A stretch of DNA of 64,000 nucleotides from Ascidiella aspersa (GCA_963924565.1 OZ004613.1:25048001-25112000), one strand, 5' to 3'. Positions 45,301 to 64,000 are shown, numbered from the stretch's first letter. The notes: generated by a model from the sequence alone, not told the origin. Numbers and translations: made by a program.

Positions 45301-46617
45301 AAAGAGTTTTATTAAAAATAAAGCGTTTTTACACAGAATATAATTGAGACTTCATTTCGCTTTCACATTTTTCGGATCGGAAAAAGCAAATTTCTGAAGT
45401 CTATTTGTTTTGTGACGTAAATTTATGACGTCACCTCTAAAAATTTGTTGCCGATGCTGGTCCATGCGAAGCCAAAAAATTCATTAGGGGGCGGGGTAAA
45501 AAAGGTTTAAGAAACCCTGCACAAAAATCAGAATTAATCACCCAAAATTTACCCTGTGTTATTTTTGCAGTTGGTCGTTTGGAATCCTTCTCTACGAGAT
45601 GGTTACCCTAGGTGCGGCTCCCTACCCCTCAATGGAACCCCGGTCTATCTTTGGCGCGCTACAGGAAGGCTACAGAATGGAAAGGCCGTCATCTTGCAAC
45701 GAATACCTGTAAGTTGGCCTAATCGGCTATGTAGTGCTTAATGCTATACACAAAACATATGTCTATGCGTAATGAATAAAATTCTTGTTTCTAAAGTATG
45801 ACTTTTATCAGTAATTATTTCGACCAATCTGAGTTTTGAACTGACTTCATTGAGTCACGTTTAACGTGTGTGCTGATTAAGTTGTCCTTTGCTGTTGCAA
45901 CTTTTTTATTGATATATTGTGATGAGACAGTGATGCAAGATAAACATTACACGATTTATAACTTTGAAAAAAAACAACAACATAAAAAGCGTCGCAAAAG
46001 TAGAAGCTGTTACTTTCTTTTTTTCCAGCTTTCAGGTTGCCGCATCTTAGACAACCTGAGAAATTTTTTGAGTAATTCAATTCATTTTAAATATTTATTT
46101 TCAGTGTCGGTTTACTTCATTTCAGTTTATTTATAAATATAATAAGTTCAAAATCGGTTACACAAAACATCGTTTTTACAGCTACGACATCATGACTCAA
46201 TGCTGGAATTGGAACGCCCTCCAGCGGCCGACCTTCAAGCAGCTCAAGGACAAACTGGCCAAGCCGCTGTCCCAACACGTGGACCCGGCTCACTTGACCG
46301 AGCAAAGGGCCATTCAGTCCACAGAGGGCCTTGATATACAGAGCTACGAGGCCGACATTGGCCGACGAGACAATGACTGCTCGTCGCCACCTAACGGCCT
46401 GCTGGAGAATGGATTTCCCGTCGGCAACGGCACTAATGGGCGACACGTGGTCGGCAACGGAATTGTGGCCACCGACGAATCGTCGCGGGCGGGAGACGAA
46501 CCCGCGACCCTTCACATTCTGAACGGATGCACAACGCACAATTGGAGCGGCAACATCCCGGTACGAATTGACTCACAGGATCAAGTGATTGACAATTTCC
46601 AGAGCGATGCAGTTTAG
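236..46617 (+). CDS. STYK1: Receptor tyrosine kinase, STYK1/NOK-like kinase domain with FN3 + 2xEGF ectodomain; 16 coding exons, ~906 aa (whole-gene span)
   Basis: Join 236-338,12185-12280,13921-13984,15228-15384,15828-16035,16979-17166,18073-18259,19319-19550,20720-20869,23288-23448,38003-38095,39087-39289,43392-43541,44455-44609,45571-45708,46182-46617 = 2721 nt. All introns are GT-AG, all phases match and there is no internal stop. Motifs [48 protein letters not shown]..RPTF. The STYK1 assignment comes from remembered motif similarity, not a search. Confidence 0.8.
1081..1405. mobile_element. hAT-like MITE
   Basis: CAGTGGTTCTCAACC...GGTTAAAAATCACTC degenerate TIR; near-TSD gcataaag/gcttaaag. 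Confidence 0.6.
9240..9690. repeat. Diverged local tandem duplication (~265 bp period) in RTK intron 1
   Basis: AACTCTTGATCTAATTTA..AGTG.TCTATGCACAAAACG and CCAAATCAAG.ACGCG appear twice. Confidence 0.75.
12185..12280 (+). CDS. RTK exon 2 (GVDYDGFLYRFVDTDANTINNLNKRSLSEVPL)
   Basis: tttttttctcccag acceptor, CTAG|gtaatt donor, phase 1-1, open frame. Confidence 0.75.
13921..13984 (+). CDS. RTK exon 3 (EDFPSSLVPLPSSPRVDFALLR)
   Basis: Long poly-T acceptor ending acacag, GAG|gtaagt donor, phase 1-2. Confidence 0.8.
15228..15384 (+). CDS. RTK exon 4, Cys-rich (CQKHIGSNIYVTAANGSSVKCAFPCKHMLGQPCSVGTGLCNRLGTNFQVLNK)
   Basis: tttcag acceptor, AAG|gtacgc donor, phase 2-0. Confidence 0.8.
15828..16035 (+). 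CDS. RTK exon 5 (DERNITLPISFGRTYSFEVLPY...DFCRSTQDMS), FN3-like C-terminal strands
   Basis: cttcgcag acceptor, GCG|gtaagt donor, phase 0-1; GC-rich coding bias. Confidence 0.85.
16600..16938. mobile_element. Non-autonomous TIR element (Harbinger-like termini) with internal CTGCAC/TTAGCAAAGCGT repeats
   Basis: GCCCGTTTACACTACAGCTGCACTGAGC ... GCTCAGTGCAGCTGTAGTGTAAACGGGC, perfect 28 bp TIR. Confidence 0.8.
16979..17166 (+). CDS. RTK exon 6, FN3 N-half (SPVDLSVEDL...VVVRWKSP...RYMVRL)
   Basis: ttcag acceptor, GTG|gtaagt donor, phase 1-0; FN3 pattern P..L.V...V.W..P...Y.V. Confidence 0.9.
17264..17522. mobile_element. hAT-like MITE, AAGTC/GACTT-repeat family
   Basis: CAGTATTGTA...TACTACACTG termini; perfect 8 bp TSD TTAAGACC. 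Confidence 0.85.
18073..18259 (+). CDS. RTK exon 7, FN3 C-half (WTLNGLEPNTAYEILLTPY)
   Basis: Classic FN3 LxPxTxY motif; CTG|gtaagt donor; phase 0-1. Confidence 0.9.
19319..19550 (+). CDS. RTK exon 8, EGF-like repeats (DVNACELGYCSQDADC...CTCKPGYTGDG; DLDAC...CQC)
   Basis: EGF cysteine spacing with DxN/DxD-type starts; phase 1-2. Confidence 0.9.
19642..19888. mobile_element. hAT-like MITE, AAGTC/GACTT family
   Basis: CAGTGTTGT...ACAACACTG TIR; TSD gatcgagg/gatcgcgg. Confidence 0.8.
19913..20207. mobile_element. hAT-like MITE (same family as 45180-45519)
   Basis: CAAGGGTTATTCAACT...TTTAAGAACCCCCG; TSD ctatatat/ctataaat. Confidence 0.7.
20720..20869 (+). CDS. RTK exon 9, end of EGF2 plus transmembrane helix (LVVGIAVGVPMVALFVCAAFLFVW) and basic stop-transfer RYRTTKKR
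   Basis: ttccag acceptor, GAG|gtgggt donor, phase 2-2. Confidence 0.9.
23288..23448 (+). CDS. RTK exon 10, juxtamembrane (ARNLKFSKFVPLRSGTYSTPQ...KWELQRNDIEKQ)
   Basis: tctttttatcggcag acceptor gives the required phase 2; WE-x-x-R pre-kinase motif; CAAG|gtatgt donor, phase 1. Confidence 0.85.
25463..25655 (+). promoter_or_regulatory. Candidate intronic promoter and alternative first exon in RTK intron 10
   Basis: 16 bp palindrome ATTGTGACGTCACAAT (CRE), a second TGACGTC, ETS site CCGGAAGTG, CpG-rich, followed by ATG G|GTGAGT. Confidence 0.35.
32124..32958. mobile_element. Non-autonomous TIR element carrying a 21 bp minisatellite
   Basis: Imperfect GGGA...ATAAGACC termini, flanking direct repeat GTTATTG on both sides, inverted copies of the 21-mer near the right end (~32813-32900). 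Confidence 0.65.
32262..32525. repeat. 21 bp minisatellite (GGAATAAGGCCTAAATTCATC)n, ~12 units
   Basis: Direct inspection; explains the repetitive ORFs MNLGLIP and DEFRPYS. Confidence 0.95.
36143..36537. mobile_element. MITE, AAGTC/GACTT family
   Basis: CAGTGTTGTA start, GACTTAAGTCAAGTCAAGTC arrays, similar to 17264-17522. Confidence 0.7.
37845..37898 (-). mobile_element. tRNA-like SINE head remnant (related fragment at ~4965-4997 on +)
   Basis: Shared GGTC.TGAGTTCGA..CTCAC.GCAGGCTAT containing a B-box. Confidence 0.45.
38003..38095 (+). CDS. RTK exon 11, kinase subdomains I-II (DVIGRGNFGVVHRATLRKDGTEKTVAVKALT)
   Basis: GxGxFG and VAVK; phase 1-1; too short for the ORF track. Confidence 0.93.
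38333..38996. mobile_element. Degenerate, partly duplicated MITE copies, AAGTC/GACTT family
   Basis: CAGCGTTGTAATGACTTAAGTC start; two similar right ends (~38710 and GCAACACTG ~38996). Confidence 0.6.
39087..39289 (+). CDS. RTK exon 12, subdomains III-V (DFLAEMSLLISLGCHDNVLGVVGVC...[18 protein letters not shown])
   Basis: alphaC Glu, HxNV, GDL; GAG|gtaaga donor; phase 1-0. Confidence 0.93.
39303..39906. mobile_element. hAT-like MITE, AAGTC/GACTT family, inserted 13 nt after the exon 12 donor
   Basis: CAGTGTTCTAA...TTATAGCACTG; TSD aaatccgg/aaatccga; internal ~44 bp GACTTAAGT repeats. Confidence 0.85.
43392..43541 (+). CDS. RTK exon 13, catalytic loop ([41 protein letters not shown])
   Basis: HGDVAARN tyrosine-kinase catalytic loop; phase 0-0. 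Confidence 0.93.
44455..44609 (+). CDS. RTK exon 14, DFG and activation loop ([36 protein letters not shown]...RSDV)
   Basis: DFG, P+1 loop, SDV split at a gtaagt donor; phase 0-2. Confidence 0.93.
45180..45519. mobile_element. hAT-like MITE
   Basis: CAGGGGTTCTTAAAC...GTTTAAGAAACCCTG TIR; internal similarity to 19913-20207. Confidence 0.75.
45571..45708 (+). CDS. RTK exon 15 ([19 protein letters not shown]...GYRMERPSSCNEYL)
   Basis: Subdomains IX-X; phase 2-2. Confidence 0.93.
46182..46617 (+). CDS. RTK exon 16, subdomain XI and C-terminal tail to stop (YDIMTQCWNWNALQRPTF...FQSDAV*)
   Basis: tttttacag acceptor; matches ORF 46192..46617; TAG stop. Confidence 0.92.
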
Positions 46618-50243: not shown

Positions 50244-50249
50244 TTTATT
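50244..50249 (-). terminator. PolyA signal of copy A
   Basis: AATAAA on the minus strand ~115 nt after the stop; the equivalent AATAAA in copy B is near 58282-58287. Confidence 0.6.
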
Positions 50250-50362
50250 TATTTGGAAGGGGAAAGGAACATTATATTACACAAAGTAATACAACGAGGT
50301 AGAGACACATTTCAAGATGGAAATTTATATTGGCTTCTTTCCCCGGGAAGCTAGACTTCTGT

Positions 50363-53178
50363 TCAATAGTAGACGTAGTAGTTTCCGCAGGTGCTGAGCT
50401 TGTAGTACGAGCTACGGCTGTAAAATGGAGAATAGTGTATGTTTATGGAAACTACAAATCGCAATGTGACTAAATCAAGACAACTAGAGACTCTTTAAAA
50501 AAGAACGAGTTGAACTAATTGCAATGATATGAATCCTAATTGTAAATATGAAACAGAAATTAATGTATTTATATATGAGTTGCAATACTCACCAGTACTG
50601 GGTGTAGTAGTAGCAGTAGGACTGGCTGGTGGGGTAGCACACACTCCAGCGAAGGTATCCTCCGAACATGTATCTGGGGTAGCAGTAAGAGACTCTGCAC
50701 TTGGAGCAGCAAGAGAAGTGCTGGACAAGGGCGGGGATCAGCTTAGCGTAGTAAGCATCGAACTCAGCCATAACAACGTTGCAGCCAGAGACAAGCTTGT
50801 TGGCGTAGGCGGAACGGGATTGGGAGACGTAATACAAGTTGTAGTAGTACTCTCCGTGGAACTTCTCGAGCATTTCGTTGTACTTGTTCCAGTGGGCGAC
50901 CTTGGCCTGCAATCCGATAAAGCAATATGTTGAATATATAATACTTTCATATCGTTATATTCAAATTGCAACTTACATCCCACATAGCGTCGTAGAAAGC
51001 GGTCCTCTTGGCGTCACGGTCATCTTCGAGCTTCTTCTTGTAAGCAGCAATGGAGGCGGCCCTCTTGCTAAGGCATGTGCTGTACTTTCCGATGACGGAC
51101 TTGATGAGCTCAGCGGCCTTGGTCTTGTAAGCGGCGATGCTCTTGTCGAAGGTGTCCACGCATTCGATGAGCCTCTGGGAAAGTTGTTCCTTGTAGAGAG
51201 CGACGGCATCGTCAAGCTTCTTCTTGAGGTCAGCGCTAAGTTTGGCAAGCTCCATACGCTGGGCATAGGTCAAATAGGTGCTGCCGTTCCTGTATTACAA
51301 AACTGGTTATCTATTTGTTCAAACATAAATAAAGGTAGTTTTTGGTTTAGTGAACTTACTGGCACACGAAGTAGGAGTACTTCATTCTGTAGATGAAGGC
51401 GTGTCTCTCCTTAATGATGGCCTCGTATTTTTCAAGGTATTCGTTGTGGTATCCGATCCACTTGAGCTTCCAGGCAACGAAGGTAGCGGTGTAAGATTTG
51501 ACGAATTCGTCAACCTTGGCCTGCATTTCGGATTCAATCACAGCGGGGGTCTTATGAAGGGCATTGAGATCTGAAAGAAAATAATGTCATTGCATCATCT
51601 GATAATATACAATTAGATAAAAGTAATGTCTACTTACCACAAGTCTTCAAGTTCTTGAAAGTCATTCCCCTGAAGCAGTAACGGAAAGCACACAAGTTGA
51701 ATCCAACGCGGCAGTATTTGCGGCTGAAGGAATACCAGCATCCGAGGGAGGCACTAAAAATACAATAACATTAGATATGACACTATTTTACAAATCTTAT
51801 ATGACTTATTGAATCGCACCATCCGTTGTAGTAGCTCTTCTTGTAGAAGTTGAGGCATCCGTTGGTCATGTAACAGCGGTAAGAACAAGTGTAGAATCCG
51901 ATGAGCTTAGACTTGTAGGAGTTAAGTTTGGTGGTGTACTCGGCCATGCATCCACGAGCAATGTTGAGTTCGCTGTTGTAGTAGTATGAGGTGACGTAGT
52001 TGATGTAGTAGTCGGTGGTGCTCTTAGTGCCTGGTAATCAAAAGTAAGGCATTCATTGTATTTTAAATCATTCAAGGTAATTCGAAATGAACTGAAAACA
52101 ATTACAAATAAACTTACAGTAAATTTTCTGCAAAAGGTTCCTGTAGTAGCTGGTCTTGGTGGTGGCAACAGCAACCTTGAACTTCCAGAAGTTGGCAACG
52201 TAAGAAGCGATCCTCTTCTCCAAAGCGGTCTTGTATTCGGCGATCTTGGTGAGACGAGTTTCAAGGCACTTCTTGGCACTGAGAAGGAATCATTTGTCAT
52301 TTAGCATTATTTTGATTTACATTAGTTAAATTTAATCCTTACTTTTCGACAATCTTGGCGTGGAAGTCGATGATCATCTGAAGCTTCTTGCTGAGCAAAG
52401 CGTTGTAAGCAACCAAGGCGTCGTATCTCATTTTGATAAGCTTGGCGGTGTATTCAACGATCTTCTCATCCCGCTCCTTGATAAGGGCATCCCTGTCAGC
52501 AGTGGCGCAGCTGAAAACGAATATAACGCAAAAGTCAGCAGTGTATTTTTTAAAACTTAAACTAGAAGGGAGATAAATTAATGTAGAAAGTTATTACTTT
52601 ATATGAAAAAAGCGATATATAAAAATTGTCTTTCTGTAACTTACGACATCTTGTAGTCGTAGTAGATGGTGATGAACTTCTTGTAGGCTTCGATGTATTC
52701 GTTGGTCTTCTCGTAAAGAGCGTTGTACCAGGCAACACGCTTGGCAATCATCTCACTGGAGATCTTGAAAAGACTCTCCTTGAGGAGGTTCTTAAGTTCT
52801 TCAACGACATCATCGACGGATTTCTCTGCACACAAGAGAAGTTTGAGTCTCTTGTTTTGAGAAAAATTTGTTGCATTTACCGTTTACTTACCAGACCATC
52901 CGGTCTTTCCGCAAGTATCATCGGGGTAAACCTTCAAGATGGGCTGGTAGAATTTGGTGGAACACCAGGCGCTGTTGAAACTGATGCTAAACCTGTAGAA
53001 GGAGGAGCAGGGGAACACATTGAAGTTGCGTCCGCAGTAGTAGGAGTAGTTGCATTGATATGCGTTGGTGGCCTGCAAAGAAACAATACGTTATTTATTG
53101 ACGATACATTTATTATTCAAATGTAGTACGTTTATTACTTACTGCAATGCAAGCCAAGAGAACGAGTAATAACTTCAT
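50363..53178 (-). CDS. Secreted Tyr/Cys/Lys-rich helical protein, copy A; 11 exons, ~648 aa; no recognisable family domain
   Basis: Minus-strand join 53178-53143,53072-52892,52825-52645,52510-52343,52278-52118,52030-51820,51753-51638,51570-51360,51289-50977,50906-50593,50417-50363 = 1947 nt. All introns are GT-AG (mostly ~65-90 nt) and phases are consistent. Starts MKLLLVLLACIAATNA (signal peptide) and ends CGNYYVYY*. Strong C/G-ending codon bias. Confidence 0.92.
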
Positions 53179-53220
53179 CGCTGTCGTTTTTCAACTTTCC
53201 TTCTTGGATAATCGAAACTG

Positions 53221-53255
53221 GACTGATTTCTTGTTTAAATCTCCCTGGTTATATA
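53221..53255 (-). promoter_or_regulatory. TATA box plus initiator core promoter of copy A
   Basis: Minus-strand TATATAA at 53255-53249 and TCAGTC Inr at 53226-53221; A(+1) lies 31 nt from the first T of TATA and 46 nt before the ATG. Confidence 0.75.
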
Positions 53256-53619
53256 GGCTTTTCCCGGACTTAGTTGCACGGACAAAAGACACAAATTGTG
53301 CACTCGAAGTGGTATTGTTTTGCCTGGCGCTCATCAGAGCAAAGTAGTTTTCCATTTCAAATTGGTTGTTTGCACAGTATAACAACCTCTTACTGCATGT
53401 TGGTGTCGAAGCTGCAGTAGAGTGGCGGTTTCCATAGATCTGTTTTGCAAAATAGTTCTTAGATGAGCGATGAGTGGTCCTGCTGAGCTACATTATTTTC
53501 GTAATTTTATGTTTGTTCTGTAAATCGTCAAATTAAACCCTATTGCGATTGGATTGCATAAAACAACATTACTGGCACTTATTCCGTTACGGCAGTGGAA
53601 CAATTCACCCTGCATCAAT

Positions 53620-54720
53620 GAAGGGTGTTTGTTCAACGCATTTGACTATTTTTCATCGCGACATCCTTTTTATTAGGGCTGTTTGTTCAAGATACATTGC
53701 CTAGAACAGCGTTGTTTCTTTAACACGTTCGGCTGTTTTTTCATCGCATATCCAAGTGGTTTAGAATGCGGATGTTGGACTTGGATCGAATATTCTTTAG
53801 GATAACAAGCGTTATTTGATGCTGACGAATTACTTGCAGCCAGGTAAAAAACAAAACAAAATATAACTGATTTTGCTAACGATACCCAGGGGTAAATACA
53901 ATCGTGTTTGTTCTGAGGGCAGAGAGGTTTTTGTTGTAACACACCCACTCCTGGATAAACATTCATTCTTCTATTAATACTACACGAACATTTCGTATTT
54001 CTTTTAAAATTTGCAATATGACCTTTACGTTATTAAAGCCGTTTGTTCAAGATACATTGCGCAGGGTTGTTTCTGTAAATCGTTCGGCTGTTTTTTCATC
54101 GCGACATCCAAGTGGTTTAGAATGCGGATGTTGGACTTGGATCGAATCTTCTTTAGGATAACAAGCGTTATTTGATGCTGGCGGAATATGTTCAACCAGG
54201 TAAAAATAAACAACAAATATAGCTGAATTTGTTAACGGTACACACGGGTAAATATTGTGTTTGTTGTGAGATAGGAGAGGCTCTTGTAGTAACACTGGCG
54301 GTCCTGGAAAAACAGTTTTTTATCGAACCAACCAGAATAACTCGTATCTTTTTTAAAATTTGCAATAGTATCGACATCTACGTTATCAGGGCCGTTTGTG
54401 TAATTTATATTGCCTATAGAGCAATTAAGGGTGTTTGCTTAACGCGCTCGGCTGATTTTGTTTCGCCGAATCCAAGTGGTTACAATTGCGGATGTTGGAC
54501 TTGGATCAAATCTTGTTTAGGATAATAAGCGTTATTTGTAACTGGCAGAATAATGTAAAAGAGTAAAGCAAACAAGTAGAGATGTCCGAATGTGCATACG
54601 ATTGTACATACGGCGCGTCCCAACAACAGCTAGATATAATTGTTTTGGTTTGGGCAAAGGTTCTTAAATTTGGCCCTTCCAGGAAAACCTTTCCTTTTAA
54701 TATACAGATAGCTCGGATCT
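53620..54720. repeat. ~360 bp diverged tandem repeat (about 3 units) upstream of copy A
   Basis: Core CCAAGTGGTT(T/A)..A.TGCGGATGTTGGACTTGGATC recurs at ~53752, ~54108 and ~54472. Confidence 0.85.
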
Positions 54721-55223
54721 GTTTTAACATTTCAGGACTGTTTTCCTTCGTTTGATATTTTCTTATTTAGCCTTCAAGAATATTACATGTAGTATATTGT
54801 TCACCACTTTTATCATTTTTTATCACAAGTAAATATTTAGTTTCTTTTCAGTTTTTTTTGTTCTTTTTTATGTAAAAAAAATAATGCCGATTTTGACGTA
54901 ACTGCGGTATTCTGAATTTTAGTGAGGTTGTATTAGATATTTTGTAACCTTCGTAGTTTGTTTTGCATAGCTCCCCTAGGCCTGATAAGAGTTTGTCTGA
55001 TCGTGTATTTTCCCAAGACTCTTTACTCTATTATTTGTACACAAACCAGCCATGCATAAGACTAACGCATGTTTGGCGTGATATGAATAGGTTCATGTTT
55101 TTATTGGTGTATTAAAAAAAATTTGAAACTATTTTGTCGCACTGTAAACAGCAAATATAGGCCACACAATTTCCTACAAATATGCCGTATCGTATAGTAT
55201 GCATTTCAAAAACTGCAATTTGC

Positions 55224-55658
55224 CAGTCTTGTAATGACGCACTTAAGTCGTTTTGGTAAAATAAATTGACTTGCCCTAATTCGTTTTTGACAAGTGATTT
55301 GACTTGGGCTTAAGTCTTGAGTATAATGAGTTAGGTTTAAATTTATAAGCGTTTTTTTCAACAATTATTTATAAAATTTAGCAATTTATCTTAAACTTTT
55401 CACGTAAACCAATTAAATTGCTACGATCGAGTTGTTTTTTGTTGGTATTGTTCTTGGTTTTGTTTTATAGAGATATAAGTGATTTGGCTTGAAAATTACT
55501 TGCTCTAATTATGACTCGACTGGAACTTTACTTAGACAAATAATGTTTTGAACTGGGACTTGACTTGTTAATTTCTATAGAAGAATTGCCTAAACTTCGG
55601 ATGCTTTTAAATGACTTAACTGGGACTTAAGTCTATTAAAAATGACTTCTTAACACTG
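55224..55658. mobile_element. hAT-like MITE, AAGTC/GACTT family
   Basis: CAGTCTTGTAATGAC...TAACACTG; TSD caatttgc/caattttc. Confidence 0.75.
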
Positions 55659-55948
55659 CAATTTTCATTTTGTTGTAGGTGGTGAATCCAAACTAGAACC
55701 TCTAAAATCACAGTTCATACCGAAACACATAACTGTAAACCTTTGTAAAAGCTTTTATCACTTATATGCCTATCTTTACCGAAATCGTAATAGTTGTAAC
55801 GCTCTATCGATTTGTGCAAAGGGAGATATGACTTAACCACGCATCATGTACCGCCACAAAACTAACCAAAGTCAGTCGGCCATTACCAGAGTGATCAAAC
55901 TAGTTTTAAAATCAATATGCATACTTTTGTTTTAGTGAAACTCCTAAA

Positions 55949-56317
55949 TAGATATGTCCGATATTTTACATTGTATTCCGATACCGATACCTGATATTTG
56001 AAGCAAATAACTATCGCGATCTGATCAGTTATAAAATAACGTCAATATTAGCCTATGCACAAACAACCAAAAACGTTAAGTTGAAACATTCAAAAGTATT
56101 TTTTAGCATTTTACTTAAAATTTTCTTTGACAGTTAACATTTTTCTTACTTAATTTTAGTTGAATCTACTATTTTTTTATAAAATTGCATTTAAGGTGAA
56201 ATCCGGTCTTAATTTGATATTGCACGGCGACCGATACCACTGAAGTATCGGACGAGTAGCGATACCACCACTGGCATCAGATATCGGCACCGATCCAATT
56301 TTATCGCACATTCCTAA
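55949..56317. mobile_element. CCGATA/TATCGG-rich TIR element (related remnant at ~33000-33415)
   Basis: TAGATATGTCCGATA...TATCGCACATTCCTA imperfect TIR with subterminal CCGATA repeats. Confidence 0.55.
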
Positions 56318-56529
56318 TAATGATCAAACAAGCAAAATAGATGAACATAAAACGTTCAAGGCAATTGTTACCTGGTTATTTGAACAAAATTCCCTTTAGC
56401 GTTAAGAAGTTTATTTACCTCCAGTTGTTTTTTAAATATTTTTTGACAAATTTACATTTTAAAAAAAATATCAAATTTTTACATTTTTGAAATACTAATC
56501 CAATGCTTTTACCAAAATACAAAATACGT

Positions 56530-56830
56530 GTGGGCGCGTTGGCGAAGTGGTTAGCGCCACTGACCAGCAATCCTCAGATCCGGGGCTCAACACCCGGTTG
56601 AGCACTTTACTTACGCGCGGTGCTTGTGGGCTGAGCACCTGAAAACCGTAGCCCGAAGATCAAGCAGAGAGCGCGAGTCGCGATCAAGTTAATAATCTCT
56701 GCAACAGCGCGTCTACGAGCTGAGCTGGCGGCCGTGGAAGGAGAAGAACATCTCTCACTACTTTACAGACTTGTATACATGCTAGTGCAATGTATGGTGA
56801 CGCGTGCATTGTATTGTGATGTATATGTAT
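56530..56830 (+). mobile_element. tRNA-derived SINE, second copy of the same family
   Basis: Highly similar to 48045-48335; 3' end shorter, no clear TSD. Confidence 0.85.
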
Positions 56831-57113
56831 TTCCTCCATGAACTAATACAACTGGTTTACCTATTCAAAGGTTTTTATTTTTAAGTTAACTTTCTTTTAG
56901 TTAACTTAGGGTTTTTCGTAAGTTTACTTTTAAGTATTTATTCAGATTAATATTAATTTCAGGAACAAATTTAAGTAAAAAATTCCGCCTACTAAAACCC
57001 GTAGATATAATGAAAACCAATCCATATATCTTGTGAGATATGAACAAACAATATCTTCAGCGAATATTGTTAAATTCATTACAAAATACCAAAATATTTC
57101 TAGATGTCAGTAG

Positions 57114-57744
57114 CATGGCTGTGGAGCTGAAGCCGGAGCTGGAGCCCGGAGCCCGGAGACCGGAGCCAAGCATTTACTCTGGAGCCAGAGCCGGAGCCAT
57201 TTTTATTACTTTTGTGGATCTGGAGCCGGAGCCAGAGCCCTTTTTATTATATTTGTGTAGCTTGAGCCAATTTTCTATTTGTGATGCTAAAGCTAAGAAA
57301 TTATATTTTGTTCCATCTCCAACGTTAGTTAGCCAAAAGCAATTTTTAAAACTTTTCTTTTTTAAACTTTTTAAAAAAAAAGCCATTCAATAAGTGACTG
57401 GTGGCACCGGAGCCGAAGCCGGAGTCATTGGGTGTGTGTTTGATGGCTCCGGAGCTGGAGCCGGAGCCGGAGACAAAGGATGTGAGTTTTACTACTCCGG
57501 AGCTGGAGCCGGAGCCGGAGCCAAAGGATTGAGTTGTACGACTCCGGAGCTGGAGCCGGAGCAATTTAATAATTGCCTCATGGCTCCGGAGCTGGAGCTG
57601 GAGCCGGAGTTGGAGCCGGAGCCAGAGCTGGAGCCGGAGCTGGAGCCGGAGCTGGAGCCGGAGCTGGAGCCGGAGCTGGAGCCGGAGCTGGAGCCGGAGC
57701 TGGAGCCAGAGCTAATGCTATTTTACGGTGGCTCCCCAGCCCTG
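57114..57744. mobile_element. hAT-like MITE with (GGAGCC/GGAGCT)n hexamer arrays
   Basis: Termini CATGGCTGTGGAGC and GGCTCCCCAGCCCTG; 8 bp TSD GTCAGTAG. Confidence 0.88.
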
Positions 57745-57761
57745 GTCAGTAGTCCATAATA

Positions 57762-58091
57762 CAGGGCTGGGGAGCCACCGTAAAATAGCATTAGCTCCGG
57801 CTCCAGCTCCGGAGTCGTAAAACTCATATCCTTTGGCTCCGGCTCCAGCTCCGGTGCCACCAGTCACTTATTCAATGGCAAGTTTTAAAAATTGCTTTTG
57901 GCTAACTAACTTTGGAGATGGAACAAAATATAATTTCTTAGCTTTAGCACCACAAATTGAAAAATGGCTCCAGCTCCACAAAAATAATAAAAATGGCTCC
58001 GGCTCCAGCTCCACAAAAATAATAAAAATGGCTCCGGCTCCGGCTCCAGCTCCACAAAAATAATAACAATGGCTCCGGCTCCCCAGCCCTG
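57762..58091. mobile_element. Second, shorter copy of the hexamer MITE in opposite orientation
   Basis: Perfect 15 bp TIR CAGGGCTGGGGAGCC; 8 bp TSD CCATAATA. Confidence 0.9.
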
Positions 58092-58392
58092 CCATAATAG
58101 ACCATAATTTTGAAATAAAGACATTTTTGAAAATATCTTTGAAAACTTTTCCTTTCGTATAAATTATTTCTATTTTTTCAGCGAGGCGACAGTTTTCAAA
58201 ATAGTGATCTCCCTGAACAACAAACTGTAAGTGGATTGTTGGATAAAAACAAACAACTCAAACAAATGGATGCTATAATATATTTATTCGGAAGGGGAAC
58301 ATTATATCACAGGAAGTAATATAACGAGGTAGAGACACGTTTTAAGATGGAAATTTAAATGGGCCTCTTTCCCCGGAAAGCTAAACTTCTGT

Positions 58393-61192
58393 TCAATAGT
58401 AGACGTAGTAGTTTCCGCAGGTGCTGAGCTTGTAGTAGGAGCTACGACTGTAAAATGAAGAATAATACACATATTTAAAATTTTTCTGCTCGATGATTTA
58501 GAAATATAAAAATAAGCATTTTGAAAAAGAGTCAATTTATAAATTCAACATTTGAATATAAAAAAGATAGCATGGCTATTGTATAGAGGTCTGAATAACT
58601 CACCAGTACTGGGTGTAGTAGTAGCAGTAGGACTGGCTGGTGGGGTAGCACACACTCCAGCGAAGGTATCCTCCGAACATGTATCTGGGGTAGCAGTAAG
58701 AGACTCTGCACTTGGAGCAGCAAGAGAAGTGCTGGACAAGGGCGGGGATCAGCTTAGCGTAGTAAGCATCGAACTCAGCCATAACAACGTTGCAGCCAGA
58801 GACAAGCTTGTTGGCGTAGGCGGAACGGGATTGGGAGACGTAATACAAGTTGTAGTAGTACTCTCCGTGGAACTTCTCGAGCATTTCGTTGTACTTGTTC
58901 CAGTGGGCGACCTTGGCCTGCAATGCGATAAAGCAATACAGTGAAATACAGAACATTTTTTTATATTGTTATATCTAAATTGTAACTTACATCCCACATA
59001 GCGTCGTAGAAAGCGGTCCTCTTGGCGTCACGGTCATCTTCGAGCTTCTTCTTGTATGCAGCAATGGAAGCAGCCCTCTTGCTAAGGCATGTGCTGTACT
59101 TTCCGATGACGGACTTGATGAGCTCAGCGGCCTTGGTCTTGTAAGCGGCGATGCTCTTGTCGAAGGTGTCCACGCATTCGATGAGCCTCTGGGAAAGCTG
59201 TTCCTTGTAGAGAGCGACGGCATCGTCAAGCTTCTTCTTGAGGTCAGCGCTAAGTTTGGCAAGCTCCATACGCTGGGCATAGGTCAAATAGGTGCTGCCG
59301 TTCCTGTATCACAAAACTGGTTATCTATTTGTTCAAACATAAATATTGGTAGTTTTTGGTTTAGTGAACTTACTGGCACACGAAGTAGGAGTACTTCATT
59401 CTGTAGATGAAGGCGTGTCTCTCCTTGATGATGGCCTCGTATTTTTCAAGGTATTCGTTGTGGTATCCGATCCACTTGAGCTTCCAGGCAACGAAGGTAG
59501 CGGTGTAAGATTTGACGAATTCGTCAACCTTGGCCTGCATTTCGGATTCAATCACAGCGGGGGTCTTATGAAGGGCATTGAGATCTGAAAGAAAATAATG
59601 TCATTGCATCATCTGATAATATACAATTAGATAAAAGTAATGTCTACTTACCACAAGTCTTCAAATTCTTGAAAGTCATTCCCCTGAAGCAGTAACGGAA
59701 AGCACACAAGTTGAATCCAACGCGGCAGTATTTGCGACTGAAGGAATACCAGCATCCGAGGGAGGCACTAAAAATACAATAACATTAGATATGGCACTAT
59801 TTTACAAATCTTATATGACTTATTGAATCGCACCATCCGTTGTAGTAGCTCTTCTTGTAGAAGTTGAGGCATCCGTTGGTCATGTAACAGCGGTAAGAAC
59901 AAGTGTAGAATCCGATAAGCTTAGACTTGTAGGAGTTAAGTTTGGTGGTGTACTCGGCCATGCATCCACGAGCAATGTTGAGTTCGCTGTTGTAGTAGTA
60001 TGAGGTGACGTAGTTGATGTAGTAGTCGGTGGTGCTCTTAGTGCCTGGTAATCAAAAGTAAGGCATTCATTGTATTTTAAATCATTCAAGGTAATTCGAA
60101 ATGAACTGAAAACAATTACAAATAAACTTACAGTAAATTTTCTGCAAAAGGTTCCTGTAGTAGCTGGTCTTGGTGGTGGCAACAGCAACCTTGAACTTCC
60201 AGAAGTTGGCAACGTAAGAAGCGATCCTCTTCTCCAAAGCGGTCTTGTATTCGGCGATCTTGGTGAGACGAGTTTCAAGGCACTTCTTGGCACTGAGAAG
60301 GAATCATTTGTCATTTAGCATTATTTTGATTTACATTAGTTAAATTTAATCCTTACTTTTCGACAATCTTGGCGTGGAAGTCGATGATCATCTGAAGCTT
60401 CTTGCTGAGCAAAGCGTTGTAAGCAACCAAGGCGTCGTATCTCATTTTGATAAGCTTGGCGGTGTATTCAACGATCTTCTCATCCCGCTCCTTGATAAGG
60501 GCATCCCTGTCAGCAGTGGCGCAGCTGAAAACGAATATAACGCAAAAGTCAGCAGTGTATTTTTTAAAACTTAAACTAGAAGGGAGATAAATTAATGTAG
60601 AAAGTTATTACTTTATATGAAAAAAGCGATATATAAAAATTGTCTTTCTGTAACTTACGACATCTTGTAGTCGTAGTAGATGGTGATGAACTTCTTGTAG
60701 GCTTCGATGTATTCGTTGGTCTTCTCGTAAAGAGCGTTGTACCAGGCAACACGCTTGGCAATCATCTCACTGGAGATCTTGAAAAGACTCTCCTTGAGGA
60801 GGTTCTTAAGTTCTTCAACGACATCATCGACGGATTTCTCTGCACACAAGAGAAGTTTGAGTCTCTTGTTTTGAGAAAAATTTGTTGCATTTACCGTTTA
60901 CTTACCAGACCATCCGGTCTTTCCGCAAGTATCATCGGGGTAAACCTTCAAGATGGGCTGGTAGAATTTGGTGGAACACCAGGCGCTGTTGAAACTGATG
61001 CTAAACCTGTAGAAGGAGGAGCAGGGGAACACATTGAAGTTGCGTCCGCAGTAGTAGGAGTAGTTGCATTGATATGCGTTGGTGGCCTGCAAAGAAACAA
61101 TACGTTATTTATTGACGATACATTTATTATTCAAATGTAGTACGTTTATTACTTACTGCAATGCAAGCCAAGAGAACGAGTAATAACTTCAT
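58393..61192 (-). CDS. Secreted Tyr/Cys/Lys-rich helical protein, copy B (tandem duplicate)
   Basis: Join 61192-61157,61086-60906,60839-60659,60524-60357,60292-60132,60044-59834,59767-59652,59584-59374,59303-58991,58917-58604,58447-58393. Exon sizes equal copy A; only synonymous differences noticed. Confidence 0.92.
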
Positions 61193-61234
61193 CGCTGTCG
61201 TTTTTCAACTTTCCTTCTTGGATAATCGAAACTG

Positions 61235-61269
61235 GACTGATTTCTTGTTTAAATCTCCCTGGTTATATA
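61235..61269 (-). promoter_or_regulatory. TATA box plus initiator core promoter of copy B
   Basis: Identical to the copy A promoter at +8014. Confidence 0.75.
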
Positions 61270-61633
61270 GGCTTTTCCCGGACTTAGTTGCACGGACAAA
61301 AGACACAAATTGTGCACTCGAAGTGGTATTGTTTTGCCTGGCGCTCATCAGAGCAAAGTAGTTTTCCATTTCAAATTGGTTGTTTGCACAGTATAACAAC
61401 CTCTTACTGCATGTTGGTGTCGAAGCTGCAGTAGAGTGGCGGTTTCCATAGATCTGTTTTGCAAAATAGTTCTTAGATGAGCGATGAGTGGTCCTGCTGA
61501 GCTACATTATTTTCGTAATTTTATGTTTGTTCTGTAAATCGTCAAATTAAACCCTATTGCGATTGGATTGCATAAAACAACATTACTGGCACTTATTCCG
61601 TTACGGCAGTGGAACAATTCACCCTGCATCAAT

Positions 61634-62734
61634 GAAGGGTGTTTGTTCAACGCATTTGACTATTTTTCATCGCGACATCCTTTTTATTAGGGCTGTTTGT
61701 TCAAGATACATTGCCTAGAACAGCGTTGTTTCTTTAACACGTTCGGCTGTTTTTTCATCGCATATCCAAGTGGTTTAGAATGCGGATGTTGGACTTGGAT
61801 CGAATATTCTTTAGGATAACAAGCGTTATTTGATGCTGACGAATTACTTGCAGCCAGGTAAAAAACAAAACAAAATATAACTGATTTTGCTAACGATACC
61901 CAGGGGTAAATACAATCGTGTTTGTTCTGAGGGCAGAGAGGTTTTTGTTGTAACACACCCACTCCTGGATAAACATTCATTCTTCTATTAATACTACACG
62001 AACATTTCGTATTTCTTTTAAAATTTGCAATATGACCTTTACGTTATTAAAGCCGTTTGTTCAAGATACATTGCGCAGGGTTGTTTCTGTAAATCGTTCG
62101 GCTGTTTTTTCATCGCGACATCCAAGTGGTTTAGAATGCGGATGTTGGACTTGGATCGAATCTTCTTTAGGATAACAAGCGTTATTTGATGCTGGCGGAA
62201 TATGTTCAACCAGGTAAAAATAAACAACAAATATAGCTGAATTTGTTAACGGTACACACGGGTAAATATTGTATTTGTTGTGAGATAGGAGAGGCTCTTG
62301 TAGTAACACTGGCGGTCCTGGAAAAACAGTTTTTTATCGAACCAACCAGAATAACTCGTATCTTTTTTAAAATTTGCAATAGTATCGACATCTACGTTAT
62401 CAGGGCCGTTTGTGTAATTTATATTGCCTATAGAGCAATTAAGGGTGTTTGCTTAACGCGCTCGGCTGATTTTGTTTCGCCGAATCCAAGTGGTTACAAT
62501 TGCGGATGTTGGACTTGGATCAAATCTTGTTTAGGATAATAAGCGTTATTTGTAACTGGCAGAATAATGTAAAAGAGTAAAGCAAACAAGTAGAGATGTC
62601 CGAATGTGCATACGATTGTACATACGGCGCGTCCCAACAACAGCTAGATATAATTGTTTTGGTTTGGGCAAAGGTTCTTAAATTTGGCCCTTCCAGGAAA
62701 ACCTTTCCTTTTAATATACAGATAGCTCGGATCT
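61634..62734. repeat. ~360 bp tandem repeat upstream of copy B
   Basis: Duplicate of 53620-54720. Confidence 0.85.
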
Positions 62735-63237
62735 GTTTTAACATTTCAGGACTGTTTTCCTTCGTTTGATATTTTCTTATTTAGCCTTCAAGAATATTAC
62801 ATGTAGTATATTGTTCACCACTTTTATCATTTTTTATCACAAGTAAATATTTAGTTTCTTTTCAGTTTTTTTTGTTCTTTTTTATGTAAAAAAAATAATG
62901 CCGATTTTGACGTAACTGCGGTATTCTGAATTTTAGTGAGGTTGTATTAGATATTTTGTAACCTTCGTAGTTTGTTTTGCATAGCTCCCCTAGGCCTGAT
63001 AAGAGTTTGTCTGATCGTGTATTTTCCCAAGACTCTTTACTCTATTATTTGTACACAAACCAGCCATGCATAAGACTAACGCATGTTTGGCGTGATATGA
63101 ATAGGTTCATGTTTTTATTGGTGTATTAAAAAAAATTTGAAACTATTTTGTCGCACTGTAAACAGCAAATATAGGCCACACAATTTCCTACAAATATGCC
63201 GTATCGTATAGTATGCATTTCAAAAACTGCAATTTGC

Positions 63238-63672
63238 CAGTCTTGTAATGACGCACTTAAGTCGTTTTGGTAAAATAAATTGACTTGCCCTAATTCGTTT
63301 TTGACAAGTGATTTGACTTGGGCTTAAGTCTTGAGTATAATGAGTTAGGTTTAAATTTATAAGCGTTTTTTTCAACAATTATTTATAAAATTTAGCAATT
63401 TCTCTTAAACTTTTCACGTAAACCAATTAAATTGCTACGATCGAGTTGTTTTTTGTTGGTATTGTTCTTGGTTTCGTTTTATAGAGATATAAGTGATTTG
63501 GCTTGAAAATTACTTGCTCTAATTATGACTCGACTGGAACTTTACTTAGACAAATAATGTTTTGAACTGGGACTTGACTTGTTAATTTCTATAGAAGAAT
63601 TGCCTAAACTTCGGATGCTTTTAAATGACTTAACTGGGACTTAAGTCTATTAAAAATGACTTCTTAACACTG
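63238..63672. mobile_element. Duplicate of the 55224-55658 MITE
   Basis: Carried in the +8014 duplication. Confidence 0.75.
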
Positions 63673-64000
63673 CAATTTTCATTTTGTTGTAGGTGGTGAA
63701 TCCAAACTAGAACCTCTAAAATCACAGTTCATACCGAAACACATAACTGTAAACCTTTGTAAAAGCTTTTATCACTTATATGCCTATCTTTACCGAAATC
63801 GTAATAGTTGTAACGCTCTATCGATTTGTGCAAAGGGAGATATGACTTAACCACGCATCATGTACCGCCACAAAACTAACCAAAGTCAGTCGGCCATTAC
63901 CAGAGTGATCAAACTAGTTTTAAAATCAATATGCATACTTTTGTTTTAGTGAAACTCCTAAATAGATATGTCCGATATTTTACATTGTATTCCGATACCG

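What the first reader, a model, noticed from the sequence alone, without database searches (positions are those of the whole stretch)
50363..61192. Tandemly amplified secreted Tyr/Cys-rich helical protein: candidate ascidian biomaterial or endostyle secretion
Seen: signal peptide, about 78 Tyr in 648 aa (~12%, hand count) with YY/YYY clusters, many Cys and Lys, and long amphipathic helical stretches alternating with Tyr/Cys-rich blocks. It also has strong codon bias, tiny introns, a TATA+Inr promoter and gene duplication, all consistent with very high expression. Knowledge: ascidians use Tyr-derived chemistry (DOPA/TOPA, halogenation) in tunic, blood-cell and adhesive proteins, iodinate endostyle products although no clear thyroglobulin orthologue is known, and have endostyle-specific secreted Ends-type proteins lacking known domains. 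Inference: this could be a cross-linkable feeding-net, tunic or adhesive fibre protein, or an iodination scaffold.
Basis: partly seen in the sequence, partly recalled or inferred. Interest (0 to 1): 0.8.

Follow-up and report, generated by a model that had tools for sequence, protein, structure and literature searches.

The report
Amplified ascidian endostyle-type secreted protein genes
The window holds two near-identical copies of a sea-squirt gene for a secreted, tyrosine-rich rod-like protein. It belongs to a tunicate-only family whose Ciona member is known as "endostyle-specific", and this genome has about 38 copies of the family, so it is a new member of a known but functionally unstudied family.

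Summary
Two minus-strand 11-exon genes (50363-53178 and 58393-61192) encode the same 648-aa secreted protein: 78 Tyr (12.0%), 31 Cys, 68 Lys. They have introns of 64-175 nt, strong codon bias, and a TATA box 31 nt upstream of an Inr-like site.

They are copies 1 and 2 of an 8-copy mirror-image array, and part of a family of about 38 genes in six arrays on four contigs.

Full-length relatives occur in Ciona, Clavelina and Styela, and in polyadenylated marine metatranscriptome contigs. One Ciona relative is RefSeq "endostyle-specific precursor" (GenBank AB010896), at 38.7% identity over 626 aa. There is no 1:1 orthology, and expression in this species could not be tested.

The protein is an internal duplication. 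Each half is a long helical bundle with an 11/3 hydrophobic periodicity, followed by a Cys/Tyr-rich block.

It has no Pfam domain. It shows a consistent but sub-threshold resemblance to apolipoproteins A-I, A-IV and E.

My best reading is a mass-produced endostyle secretion that acts as a cross-linkable component of the feeding mucus. The iodination-scaffold idea is weakened by the 2026 report of a Tg1-domain thyroid-hormone precursor in Styela.

The parts
50363..53178 (-). Copy 1 of the Ends-family gene (start to stop codon, 11 exons, 648 aa)
   Evidence: Exons: 53178-53143, 53072-52892, 52825-52645, 52510-52343, 52278-52118, 52030-51820, 51753-51638, 51570-51360, 51289-50977, 50906-50593, 50417-50363. 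All introns are GT..AG. The protein is identical to copy 2.
58393..61192 (-). Copy 2 of the Ends-family gene (start to stop codon, 11 exons, 648 aa)
   Evidence: Exons: 61192-61157, 61086-60906, 60839-60659, 60524-60357, 60292-60132, 60044-59834, 59767-59652, 59584-59374, 59303-58991, 58917-58604, 58447-58393. Introns are 70, 66, 134, 64, 87, 66, 67, 70, 73 and 156 nt.
61234..61269 (-). Core promoter of copy 2: TATATAA (61269-61263) and Inr-like TCAGTCC (61240-61234, A at 61238)
   Evidence: TATA starts 31 nt upstream of the Inr A. The inferred leader is 46 nt. No transcript-start data are available.
53220..53255 (-). Core promoter of copy 1: TATATAA (53255-53249) and Inr-like TCAGTCC (53226-53220)
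   Evidence: Same spacing as in copy 2.
58283..58288 (-). AATAAA polyadenylation signal of copy 2
   Evidence: It lies 104 nt after the stop codon.
50248..50253 (-). AATAAA polyadenylation signal of copy 1
   Evidence: It lies 109 nt after the stop codon.
50569..55986 (.). Tandem unit A: most of gene copy 1 plus its upstream spacer
   Evidence: 99.3% identical over 5,424 nt to 58579-64000. The start-to-start period is about 8,011-8,014 nt.
58579..64000 (.). Tandem unit B: most of gene copy 2 plus its upstream spacer; it runs off the window end
   Evidence: The array continues beyond the window, with six more copies at G000:C7:25.115-25.158 Mb.
60907..61086 (-). Exon 2 of copy 2: N-terminal Cys/Tyr block, the best-conserved exon of the family
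   Evidence: 42-57% identity to all paralogue clusters. It gave 37 matches in the genome.
58606..58917 (-). Exon 10 of copy 2: end of helical domain 2 plus the C-terminal Cys/Tyr block with the conserved C-x3-C motif
   Evidence: Alignment A1. This was the profile used for the 1.84-billion-protein search that recovered the ascidian family.

Best explanation
These are two adjacent, recently duplicated or homogenised members of a tunicate-specific family of secreted proteins. The only named member of the family is the Ciona intestinalis 'endostyle-specific' gene (AB010896).

Each protein has five parts after the signal peptide:
- a short Cys/Tyr block;
- a helical domain of about 170 aa;
- a Cys/Tyr block of about 110 aa;
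- a helical domain of about 215 aa;
- a Tyr-rich (22%) Cys-containing tail of about 80 aa.

The two halves are an ancient internal duplication. Each helical domain is predicted to fold as three very long antiparallel helices (about 45-110 residues each). They have an 11/3 (hendecad) hydrophobic repeat and conserved Cys that could staple the bundle.

Most likely mechanism (inferred): glandular cells of the endostyle make the protein in bulk and secrete it into the pharyngeal feeding mucus. There the stiff two-module rods are linked to each other, or to other mucus components, through the Cys/Tyr-rich blocks. The links could be disulfides, aromatic contacts, or peroxidase-made Tyr cross-links. 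The mucus is made and eaten continuously, so demand for the protein is high. That would explain the roughly 38 gene copies, the near-identical arrays, the strong codon bias, the tiny introns and the TATA promoter.

Step-wise odds: member of this family, about 0.97. Mainly an endostyle secretion in this species, about 0.65. Structural or cross-linked mucus component, about 0.4.
For: Shown:
- Gene models and composition.
- Duplication at 99.3% identity.
- Codon bias ENC 35.1 and the TATA/Inr spacing.
- 37 genomic matches with each of two different exons, in arrays on C7, C4, C3 and C1, with shared exon architecture.
- Purifying selection among array copies, dN/dS 0.10-0.27.
- Full-length homologues at 30-44% identity in Ciona, Clavelina and Styela.
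- The Ciona homologue P0055/P0058 is named 'endostyle-specific (precursor)'. It matches the AB010896 primers of PMC7347631 at residues 83 and 120, which fits the stated 132-bp amplicon.
- A distant family member sits on a 2,011-nt intronless contig ending in at least 32 A's in a JGI environmental sample, so the family is transcribed and polyadenylated.
- Internal duplication, E 8e-8.
- AlphaFold2 model, pLDDT 79.9, with helices 75-133, 137-243, 250-293 and 361-428, 435-547, 554-596.
- Hydrophobic period of 3.65 residues, z 12-15.
- Nine Cys conserved across the family, and 27 of 78 Tyr conserved in at least 7 of 9 ascidian homologues.

Background from papers: the endostyle secretes the feeding mucus (PMC8462739; PMC10980280). 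Also, 56% of Ciona endostyle-specific genes have no vertebrate homologue.
Against: - No expression data exist for these genes in this species. The only RNA run on offer gave 0 reads out of 7.8 million sampled, and its tissue is unknown, so the tool rates it as no test.
- The tree gives lineage-specific expansions and unresolved deep forks. Endostyle specificity is documented for one Ciona paralogue only and may not hold for every cluster.
- I could not read the primary 1998 paper, so the endostyle zone and any protein data are unknown to me.
- Nothing shows that the protein is in the mucus net or that its Tyr or Cys are cross-linked.
- Tyr content drops to 3.7-6.3% in the distant metatranscriptome members, so Tyr-richness is not essential to the family fold.
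Confidence: 0.6

Rival explanations
1. A structural protein of another secretion (tunic cuticle, larval or adult adhesive, egg envelope). Some of the roughly 38 paralogues, including this array, would have moved to a tissue other than the endostyle.
For: Tyr/Cys-rich secreted proteins in amplified arrays are typical of hardened extracellular materials (general knowledge). There is no 1:1 orthology to the Ciona endostyle gene. The paralogue clusters are deeply diverged, at 32-51% identity, which leaves room for different expression domains.
Against: The only member with a documented expression pattern is endostyle-specific. No chitin-binding, cellulose-binding, EGF or ZP domain, or any other matrix domain, was found.
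Confidence: 0.15
2. A lipid-binding or hydrophobic-surface-binding protein that works like an exchangeable apolipoprotein, and may be distantly related to that family. The helical bundles would open and coat lipid droplets, particles or mucus filaments.
For: - The family profile searched against PDB sequences returns almost only apolipoproteins: ApoA-I at E 3.7e-7, ApoE at 1.5e-4, ApoA-IV at 2.7e-4. These fill most of the top 40 and match both helical domains.
- Pfam PF01442 is the top hit for distant members: P0014 at 48 bits (E 1.6e-12) and P0012 at 40.8 bits. The precomputed annotation agrees.
- The 11/3 periodicity is the apolipoprotein type.
Against: - All scores are far below Pfam's 90-bit cut-off. 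The window's own exon 9 scores 14.4 bits.
- There are 0-1 Pro in the helical domains, so no Pro-punctuated 22-mers.
- No solved apolipoprotein A-I, A-IV or E appears in the Foldseek rows shown or the VIA top 50.
- Periodic amphipathic helices can converge.
- The Cys/Tyr blocks have no apolipoprotein counterpart.
Confidence: 0.12
3. An iodination substrate. The Tyr-rich protein would be secreted past the peroxidase-positive endostyle zones, iodinated, and digested in the gut as an exocrine source of iodotyrosines or thyroid hormone.
For: Tyr is 12% overall and 22% in the C-terminal tail. A Ciona paralogue is expressed in the endostyle. A 2026 review argues that hormone synthesis began with iodination of secreted protein destined for gut proteolysis (PMC13078365).
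Against: A Tg1-domain protein in zones 7-9 has been shown to yield T3 immunoreactivity on in vitro iodination and to be needed for hormone levels and metamorphosis in Styela (PMC12992692). The present family has no Tg1 or ChEL domain. Tyr content is not conserved in distant members.
Confidence: 0.08
4. Non-functional repeated DNA or a mis-built gene model.
For: Two of the eight array copies are damaged. One has a stop at codon 521, and one lacks the promoter and exon 1.
Against: - Six copies have intact 648-aa ORFs with conserved splice sites.
- dN/dS is 0.10-0.27.
- All 10 differences between the window copies are synonymous.
- Annotated proteins of four other ascidian species align collinearly over the full length.
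Confidence: 0.02

Closest known systems
Ciona intestinalis 'endostyle-specific precursor' (NP_001107601.1 / BAA24830.1 / UniProt O44237; mRNA AB010896). It is one of the CiEnds genes of Ogasawara and Satoh 1998; which CiEnds number it carries I could not verify.
   Same: It has the same length class (650 against 648 aa) and the same signal peptide. The alignment is collinear over 626 aa at 38.7% identity, E 1e-144. It shares the two-repeat architecture and the conserved Cys. Neither has a Pfam domain.
   Different: It is not a 1:1 orthologue. Its Tyr content is 9.2% against 12.0%. Ciona has a handful of family genes, whereas this genome has about 38 in long arrays. Expression of the window genes is untested.
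Uncharacterised ascidian paralogues: C. intestinalis LOC100186110 and LOC104266762; C. savignyi H2YRI4 and H2YML8; Clavelina lepadiformis LOC143452698-701; Styela clava LOC120332193-5, LOC120332836/848 and others.
   Same: They are the closest sequences, at 44%, 43.6%, 40.8%, 40% and 30% identity over the full length. Many family loci lie on one chromosome-sized contig, and in Clavelina four carry consecutive LOC numbers, which suggests clustering.
   Different: None has a described function or expression pattern that I could find.
Vertebrate exchangeable apolipoproteins A-I / A-IV / E (Pfam PF01442)
   Same: Both are secreted proteins built of long amphipathic helices with an 11/3 periodicity. 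The sequence similarity is weak but selective.
   Different: The Pfam threshold is not reached. There are no Pro-punctuated 22-mers and no structural hit to A-I, A-IV or E. The Cys/Tyr-rich blocks and the 11-exon gene structure have no counterpart. I know of no lipid-related context.
Styela clava ScTG-like (Tg1-domain thyroid-hormone precursor, PMC12992692)
   Same: It is a secreted protein associated with the ascidian endostyle.
   Different: It is a completely different architecture (many Tg1 domains, 630 kDa) and localises to the thyroid-equivalent zones 7-9.

Membership tests
Tunicate Ends family (type: Ciona AB010896 'endostyle-specific') | Full-length collinear sequence similarity to the Ciona protein | tested here: met
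   38.7% identity over 626 aa, E 1e-144, by local BLASTP of the joined model against P0058. Independent support comes from an exon-10 profile search of 1.84 billion proteins, which recovered the ascidian family.
Tunicate Ends family (type: Ciona AB010896 'endostyle-specific') | Architecture: signal peptide, two helical domains, three Cys/Tyr blocks, conserved Cys pattern | tested here: met
   Alignment A2 has an invariant M1 and seven invariant Cys. Window Cys 66, 193, 291, 295, 301, 351, 494, 592 and 596 are conserved in at least 8 of 9 ascidian homologues. The internal repeat scores E 8e-8.
Tunicate Ends family (type: Ciona AB010896 'endostyle-specific') | Endostyle-specific expression | not testable with these tools
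   The one RNA run laid gave 0 reads and its tissue is unknown.
Exchangeable apolipoproteins A1/A4/E (PF01442) | Score above Pfam's gathering threshold (90 bits) | tested here: not met
   Window exon 9 scores 14.4 bits. The best family member, P0014, scores 48 bits.
Exchangeable apolipoproteins A1/A4/E (PF01442) | Amphipathic helices with 11-residue (3.67 per turn) periodicity | tested here: met
   The spectral peak is at 3.65 residues, z 12-15, with no shuffle reaching it in the full-domain tests.
Exchangeable apolipoproteins A1/A4/E (PF01442) | Tandem 22-mers punctuated by proline | tested here: not met
   The two helical domains contain 0 and 1 Pro. The model shows unbroken helices of up to 113 residues.
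Exchangeable apolipoproteins A1/A4/E (PF01442) | Structural similarity to solved apolipoprotein bundles | tested here: inconclusive
   Foldseek found no match at E <= 0.001. The best VIA Z is 9.5, to generic helical hairpins, below the roughly 13 needed for helical folds. The model is of a paralogue and covers 642 residues; single domains were not searched alone.
Thyroglobulin / TG-like hormone precursors | Thyroglobulin type-1 repeats (with or without a ChEL domain) | tested here: not met
   No Pfam hit of that kind in any exon or in seven full-length homologues.
vWF-like / gel-forming mucin net proteins (CiVWFL type) | VWD, VWA, C8 or TIL domains | tested here: not met
   No such Pfam hits.

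The most novel reading that the evidence does not exclude
The helical domains of the Ends family are true remote homologues of the vertebrate exchangeable apolipoproteins (ApoA-I / A-IV / E). That vertebrate-only family would then descend from a hendecad-repeat protein secreted by the pharyngeal endoderm of the tunicate-vertebrate ancestor. In tunicates the protein would have gained Cys/Tyr cross-linking blocks and become a bulk component of the feeding mucus.
Probability: 0.1. Interest if true: 0.75.

Novelty: new member of a known kind. Interest (0 to 1): 0.45.

Why it matters
The protein make-up of the ascidian feeding mucus is poorly known. The Ends genes have served as endostyle markers since the 1990s without any functional or structural description that I could find.

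This locus adds four things:
- The family is far larger than the name suggests, with about 38 genes here in mirror-image and tandem arrays.
- It is under purifying selection.
- It has a clear modular design: two hendecad helical rods, each followed by a Cys/Tyr block.
- It is the kind of gene an animal amplifies for bulk secretion.

That gives concrete candidates for proteomics of the mucus net and for tests of Tyr cross-linking or iodination. The selective resemblance to apolipoproteins is a testable lead on where that vertebrate family came from.

Tried and rejected
- **Pfam on nine single exons:** nothing above threshold.
- **ESM Atlas with exon 9:** best score 0.80, no lead.
- **Word search with exon 10:** only one 94-aa Logan fragment, because full-length kin fall outside the length window. 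Its contig could not be fetched.
- **Word search with Styela P0009, to reach Halocynthia HrEnds:** only the query itself. A link to HrEnds1/2 is therefore untested.
- **Reads:** RNA run X5 gave 0 reads, which is no test. X1 and X2 are unspliced genomic contigs of the same organism. X3 and X4, which carry other organism labels, hold near-identical pieces at low depth and are uninformative on expression.
- **Foldseek and VIA-align against the PDB:** only generic long-helix matches.
- **Hydrophobic moment at 100 degrees on the Eisenberg scale:** z of about 1. The spectral test supersedes it.
- **Paper searches:** searches for family LOC numbers and accessions found only the primer table in PMC7347631. 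The 1998 Biol. Bull. paper is not held. The supplements of PMC8462739 did not list these genes by name.
- **Earlier notes of this scan:** nothing on this family.
- Those searches used single exons by reference or database proteins by id. The joined model was used only inside local scripts (composition, local BLAST against fetched proteins, tree).

Full report
**What is there.** On the minus strand of the window I built two 11-exon gene models. Copy 1 runs from its ATG at 53178 to its stop at 50363, and copy 2 from 61192 to 58393.

- Both models give a 648-aa ORF. All introns are GT..AG and measure 64-175 nt. Intron 6 has a weak donor, GTGCGA, and a GT at that donor position is kept in all eight copies of the array.
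- The N-terminus (MKLLLVLLACIAATNA, then YQC) looks like a signal peptide by inspection and is conserved across the family.
- The two copies encode the same protein. Their 10 CDS differences are all synonymous.
- The duplicated unit is 99.3% identical over 5.4 kb and runs off the window end.
- Codon usage is strongly biased: ENC 35.1, GC3 0.72 against intron GC 0.26, TAC 72 of 78, AAG 59 of 68.
- In both copies a TATATAA starts 31 nt upstream of the A of an Inr-like TCAGTCC, leaving a 46-nt leader. AATAAA follows the stop by 104-109 nt.

**The array and the family in this genome.** The window is G000:C7:25,048,001-25,112,000 of a 308.6-Mb assembly.

- Exon 9 and exon 2, searched separately in the assembly, each give 37 matches.
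- The matches fall into six groups:
  - eight copies on C7 at 25.098-25.158 Mb;
  - eight on C4 at 6.08-6.15 Mb;
  - two on C4 at 11.56 Mb;
  - one on C1 at 3.77 Mb;
  - about thirteen on C3 at 7.47-7.61 Mb, with an 11.2-kb period;
  - six on C3 at 8.07-8.17 Mb.
- Paralogues from every group share the exon 2 to exon 10 architecture at 25-57% identity.
- The C7 array is mirror-shaped. Four minus-strand copies are followed by four plus-strand copies, transcribed away from a centre near 25.124-25.129 Mb. The main C4 array has the same shape.
- Of the eight C7 copies, six have intact 648-aa ORFs. One has a stop at codon 521. The copy next to the centre has lost the TATA box and exon 1.
- Pairwise dS reaches 0.077 and dN/dS is 0.10-0.27, so the protein is under purifying selection.

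**What it is related to.** Single exons hit no Pfam family. The ESM Atlas gave no lead. The word search could not see full-length kin because of its length window.

I then built a profile of exon 10 from nine paralogues and searched it against 1.84 billion representatives. It returned 19 proteins. Every hit that carries a name is from an ascidian: Ciona savignyi, Clavelina lepadiformis or Styela clava. The rest are unnamed Logan fragments or metatranscriptome sequences.

A word search with the closest full-length hit added the Ciona intestinalis proteins, one of which is named "endostyle-specific". This is NP_001107601.1 / BAA24830.1 / O44237, "endostyle-specific precursor".

The published qPCR primers for accession AB010896 (PMC7347631, Table 5) translate to LLKESLL and NITRYYA. 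Both occur in that protein, at positions 83 and 120, which matches the stated 132-bp amplicon.

In local alignments, the window protein matches its relatives over essentially its whole length:

| Relative | Identity to window protein |
|---|---|
| C. savignyi H2YRI4 | 44.2% |
| C. intestinalis LOC100186110 | 43.6% |
| C. intestinalis LOC104266762 | 40.8% |
| Clavelina proteins | about 40% |
| Ciona endostyle-specific protein | 38.7% (E 1e-144) |
| Styela proteins | about 30% |
| Metatranscriptome proteins | 22-23% |

A maximum-likelihood tree on five exon-sized blocks shows lineage-specific expansions and unresolved deep forks. The window genes therefore belong to the family but are not 1:1 orthologues of the named Ciona gene.

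In Styela and Clavelina, many family loci lie on a single chromosome-sized contig, and in Clavelina four carry consecutive LOC numbers. This suggests that clustering is a family habit.

**Anatomy of the protein.**

- The two halves are an old internal duplication. Residues 85-295 align with 354-596 at 26% identity, E 8e-8.
- The reading order is: signal peptide; N block (17-72, 12.5% Tyr, 5 Cys); helical domain 1 (73-241, 8.3% Tyr); middle block (242-351, 16.4% Tyr, 11 Cys); helical domain 2 (352-566, 9.8% Tyr); C block (567-648, 22% Tyr, 9 Cys).
- I folded the Ciona paralogue LOC100186110 with AlphaFold2, using a 17-sequence family alignment. Mean pLDDT was 79.9 and pTM 0.41. Each half has three long helices (75-133, 137-243, 250-293 and 361-428, 435-547, 554-596). 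The middle block has lower confidence, and the two termini have very low confidence.
- In the window protein itself, the hydrophobic pattern of both helical domains has a sharp spectral peak at 3.65 residues (11/3), with z of 12-15 against shuffles. That is the periodicity of straight, non-supercoiled amphipathic helices rather than of heptad coiled coils.
- Nine Cys are conserved in at least 8 of 9 ascidian homologues. They include one in the long middle helix of each half (193, 494) and a C-x3-C at the end of each third helix (291/295, 592/596). This pattern would suit intradomain staples, but that is inference.
- Of the 78 Tyr, 27 are conserved as Tyr and 39 as aromatic residues in at least 7 of 9 ascidian homologues. 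Tyr content falls to 3.7-6.3% in the distant members.

**Resemblance to apolipoproteins.** No solved structure matches specifically. The best Foldseek E-value is 1.7, and the best VIA Z is 9.5, to generic helical hairpins.

By sequence the picture is different. The family profile searched against PDB chains returns almost only ApoA-I (E 3.7e-7), ApoE (1.5e-4) and ApoA-IV (2.7e-4), as long, essentially ungapped alignments in both helical domains. Pfam PF01442 is the top hit for the distant members, at up to 48 bits and E 1.6e-12.

All of these scores are far below Pfam's 90-bit cut-off. The helical domains have 0-1 Pro, so they lack the Pro-punctuated 22-mers. I therefore record "works like, in helix design" and not "member". 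Convergence of periodic amphipathic helices is the simpler explanation.

**Expression.** I could not measure expression in this species.

- The holders of the sequence among public runs are genomic contigs that still contain the introns.
- The one RNA run with the same species label gave no reads among 7.8 million sampled. Its tissue is unknown, and the tool itself calls this no test.
- At family level, a 2,011-nt contig from a JGI environmental sample carries an uninterrupted 603-aa ORF and ends in at least 32 A's. It derives from a polyadenylated mRNA.
- The Ciona member was deposited as an endostyle-specific mRNA. I could not read the 1998 primary paper, so I make no statement about endostyle zones.

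**How it most likely works.**

- Shown: a secreted-type protein of a tunicate-only family, made of two hendecad helical rods, each followed by a Cys/Tyr-rich block. It is amplified, under purifying selection, and has the codon, intron and promoter features usual for very highly expressed genes.
- Inferred: it is a bulk product of endostyle gland cells that enters the feeding mucus, and the Cys/Tyr blocks link the rods to each other or to other mucus components. The mucus is produced and swallowed continuously (general knowledge; see also PMC8462739), which would explain the gene dosage.
- Odds: family membership about 0.97, endostyle secretion in this species about 0.65, cross-linked structural role about 0.4.

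Rivals:
- A different secretion (tunic, adhesive, egg coat) after paralogue divergence: 0.15.
- Apolipoprotein-like binding of lipid or hydrophobic surfaces: 0.12.
- An iodination substrate: 0.08. This last option has lost ground. A Tg1-domain protein in zones 7-9 was shown in 2026 to act as the thyroid-hormone precursor in Styela (PMC12992692). Bystander iodination of a Tyr-rich secretion remains possible, and fits the idea that hormone synthesis began with secreted protein destined for the gut (PMC13078365 abstract).

**Novelty and verdict.** This is a new, heavily amplified member of a family known by name since the 1990s but never characterised. To my knowledge, three things have not been described before: the size and mirror-array layout of the family here, the two-module hendecad design, and the selective apolipoprotein-like signal. 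None of them overturns current views. Interest is moderate.

**Limits.**

- Searches used single exons by reference or database proteins by id. The fold is of a 43.6%-identical paralogue.
Its relatives show that it is an ascidian, with family members closer to the Ciona and Clavelina sequences than to the Styela ones.

Noticed in passing
G000:C7:25,098,977-25,157,354 (window 50363-64000 and beyond) and G000:C4:6,082,553-6,149,801: Both arrays are mirror-shaped. A block of minus-strand copies is followed by a block of plus-strand copies, transcribed away from a centre. This suggests an inverted duplication of a tandem array, and it happened or was maintained in two separate clusters.
   Followed up: partly
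L022 (G000:C7:25114000-25117700) and L024 (G000:C7:25129050-25132750): Two of the eight C7 copies are damaged. One has Tyr521 changed to a stop. The copy next to the array centre lacks the TATA box, the leader and exon 1 (a deletion of about 150 nt).
   Followed up: yes
window 53713-54552 and 61727-62566: A 356-nt unit is repeated 2.3 times (78% matches) in the spacer upstream of each gene copy. Its nature was not examined (mobile element or regulatory repeat).
   Followed up: no
window 57178-58082: The spacer downstream of copy 2 holds a CCGGAG hexamer microsatellite (57586-57713) flanked by 35-48-nt minisatellites built of the same GGAGCC/GGCTCC motif on both strands.
   Followed up: no
window 38978-39313 (+) and about 46192-46617 (+): Exons of a protein tyrosine kinase gene lie upstream of the array (PF07714, 29.3 bits against a cut-off of 23.1). 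Its introns span kilobases, unlike the tiny introns of the Ends-type genes.
   Followed up: partly
window 31984-32662 (-): Long open frames on the minus strand are made of a degenerate repeat of about 24 nt (LGLIPMNL-type translation). It is probably a minisatellite rather than a gene.
   Followed up: no
P0018 / P0048-P0050 (JGI metatranscriptome proteins, 835-848 aa): A distant family member carries an N-terminal extension of about 250 aa, made of MGGKS and WSAVPNYNH-type repeats, ahead of the usual architecture.
   Followed up: no
window 58200-61400, runs X3 and X4: Contig sets filed under two other organism labels hold pieces 95-100% identical to this gene, introns and promoter included, at low depth (2-10). 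Possible causes are the same species complex, mislabelling or contamination.
   Followed up: no
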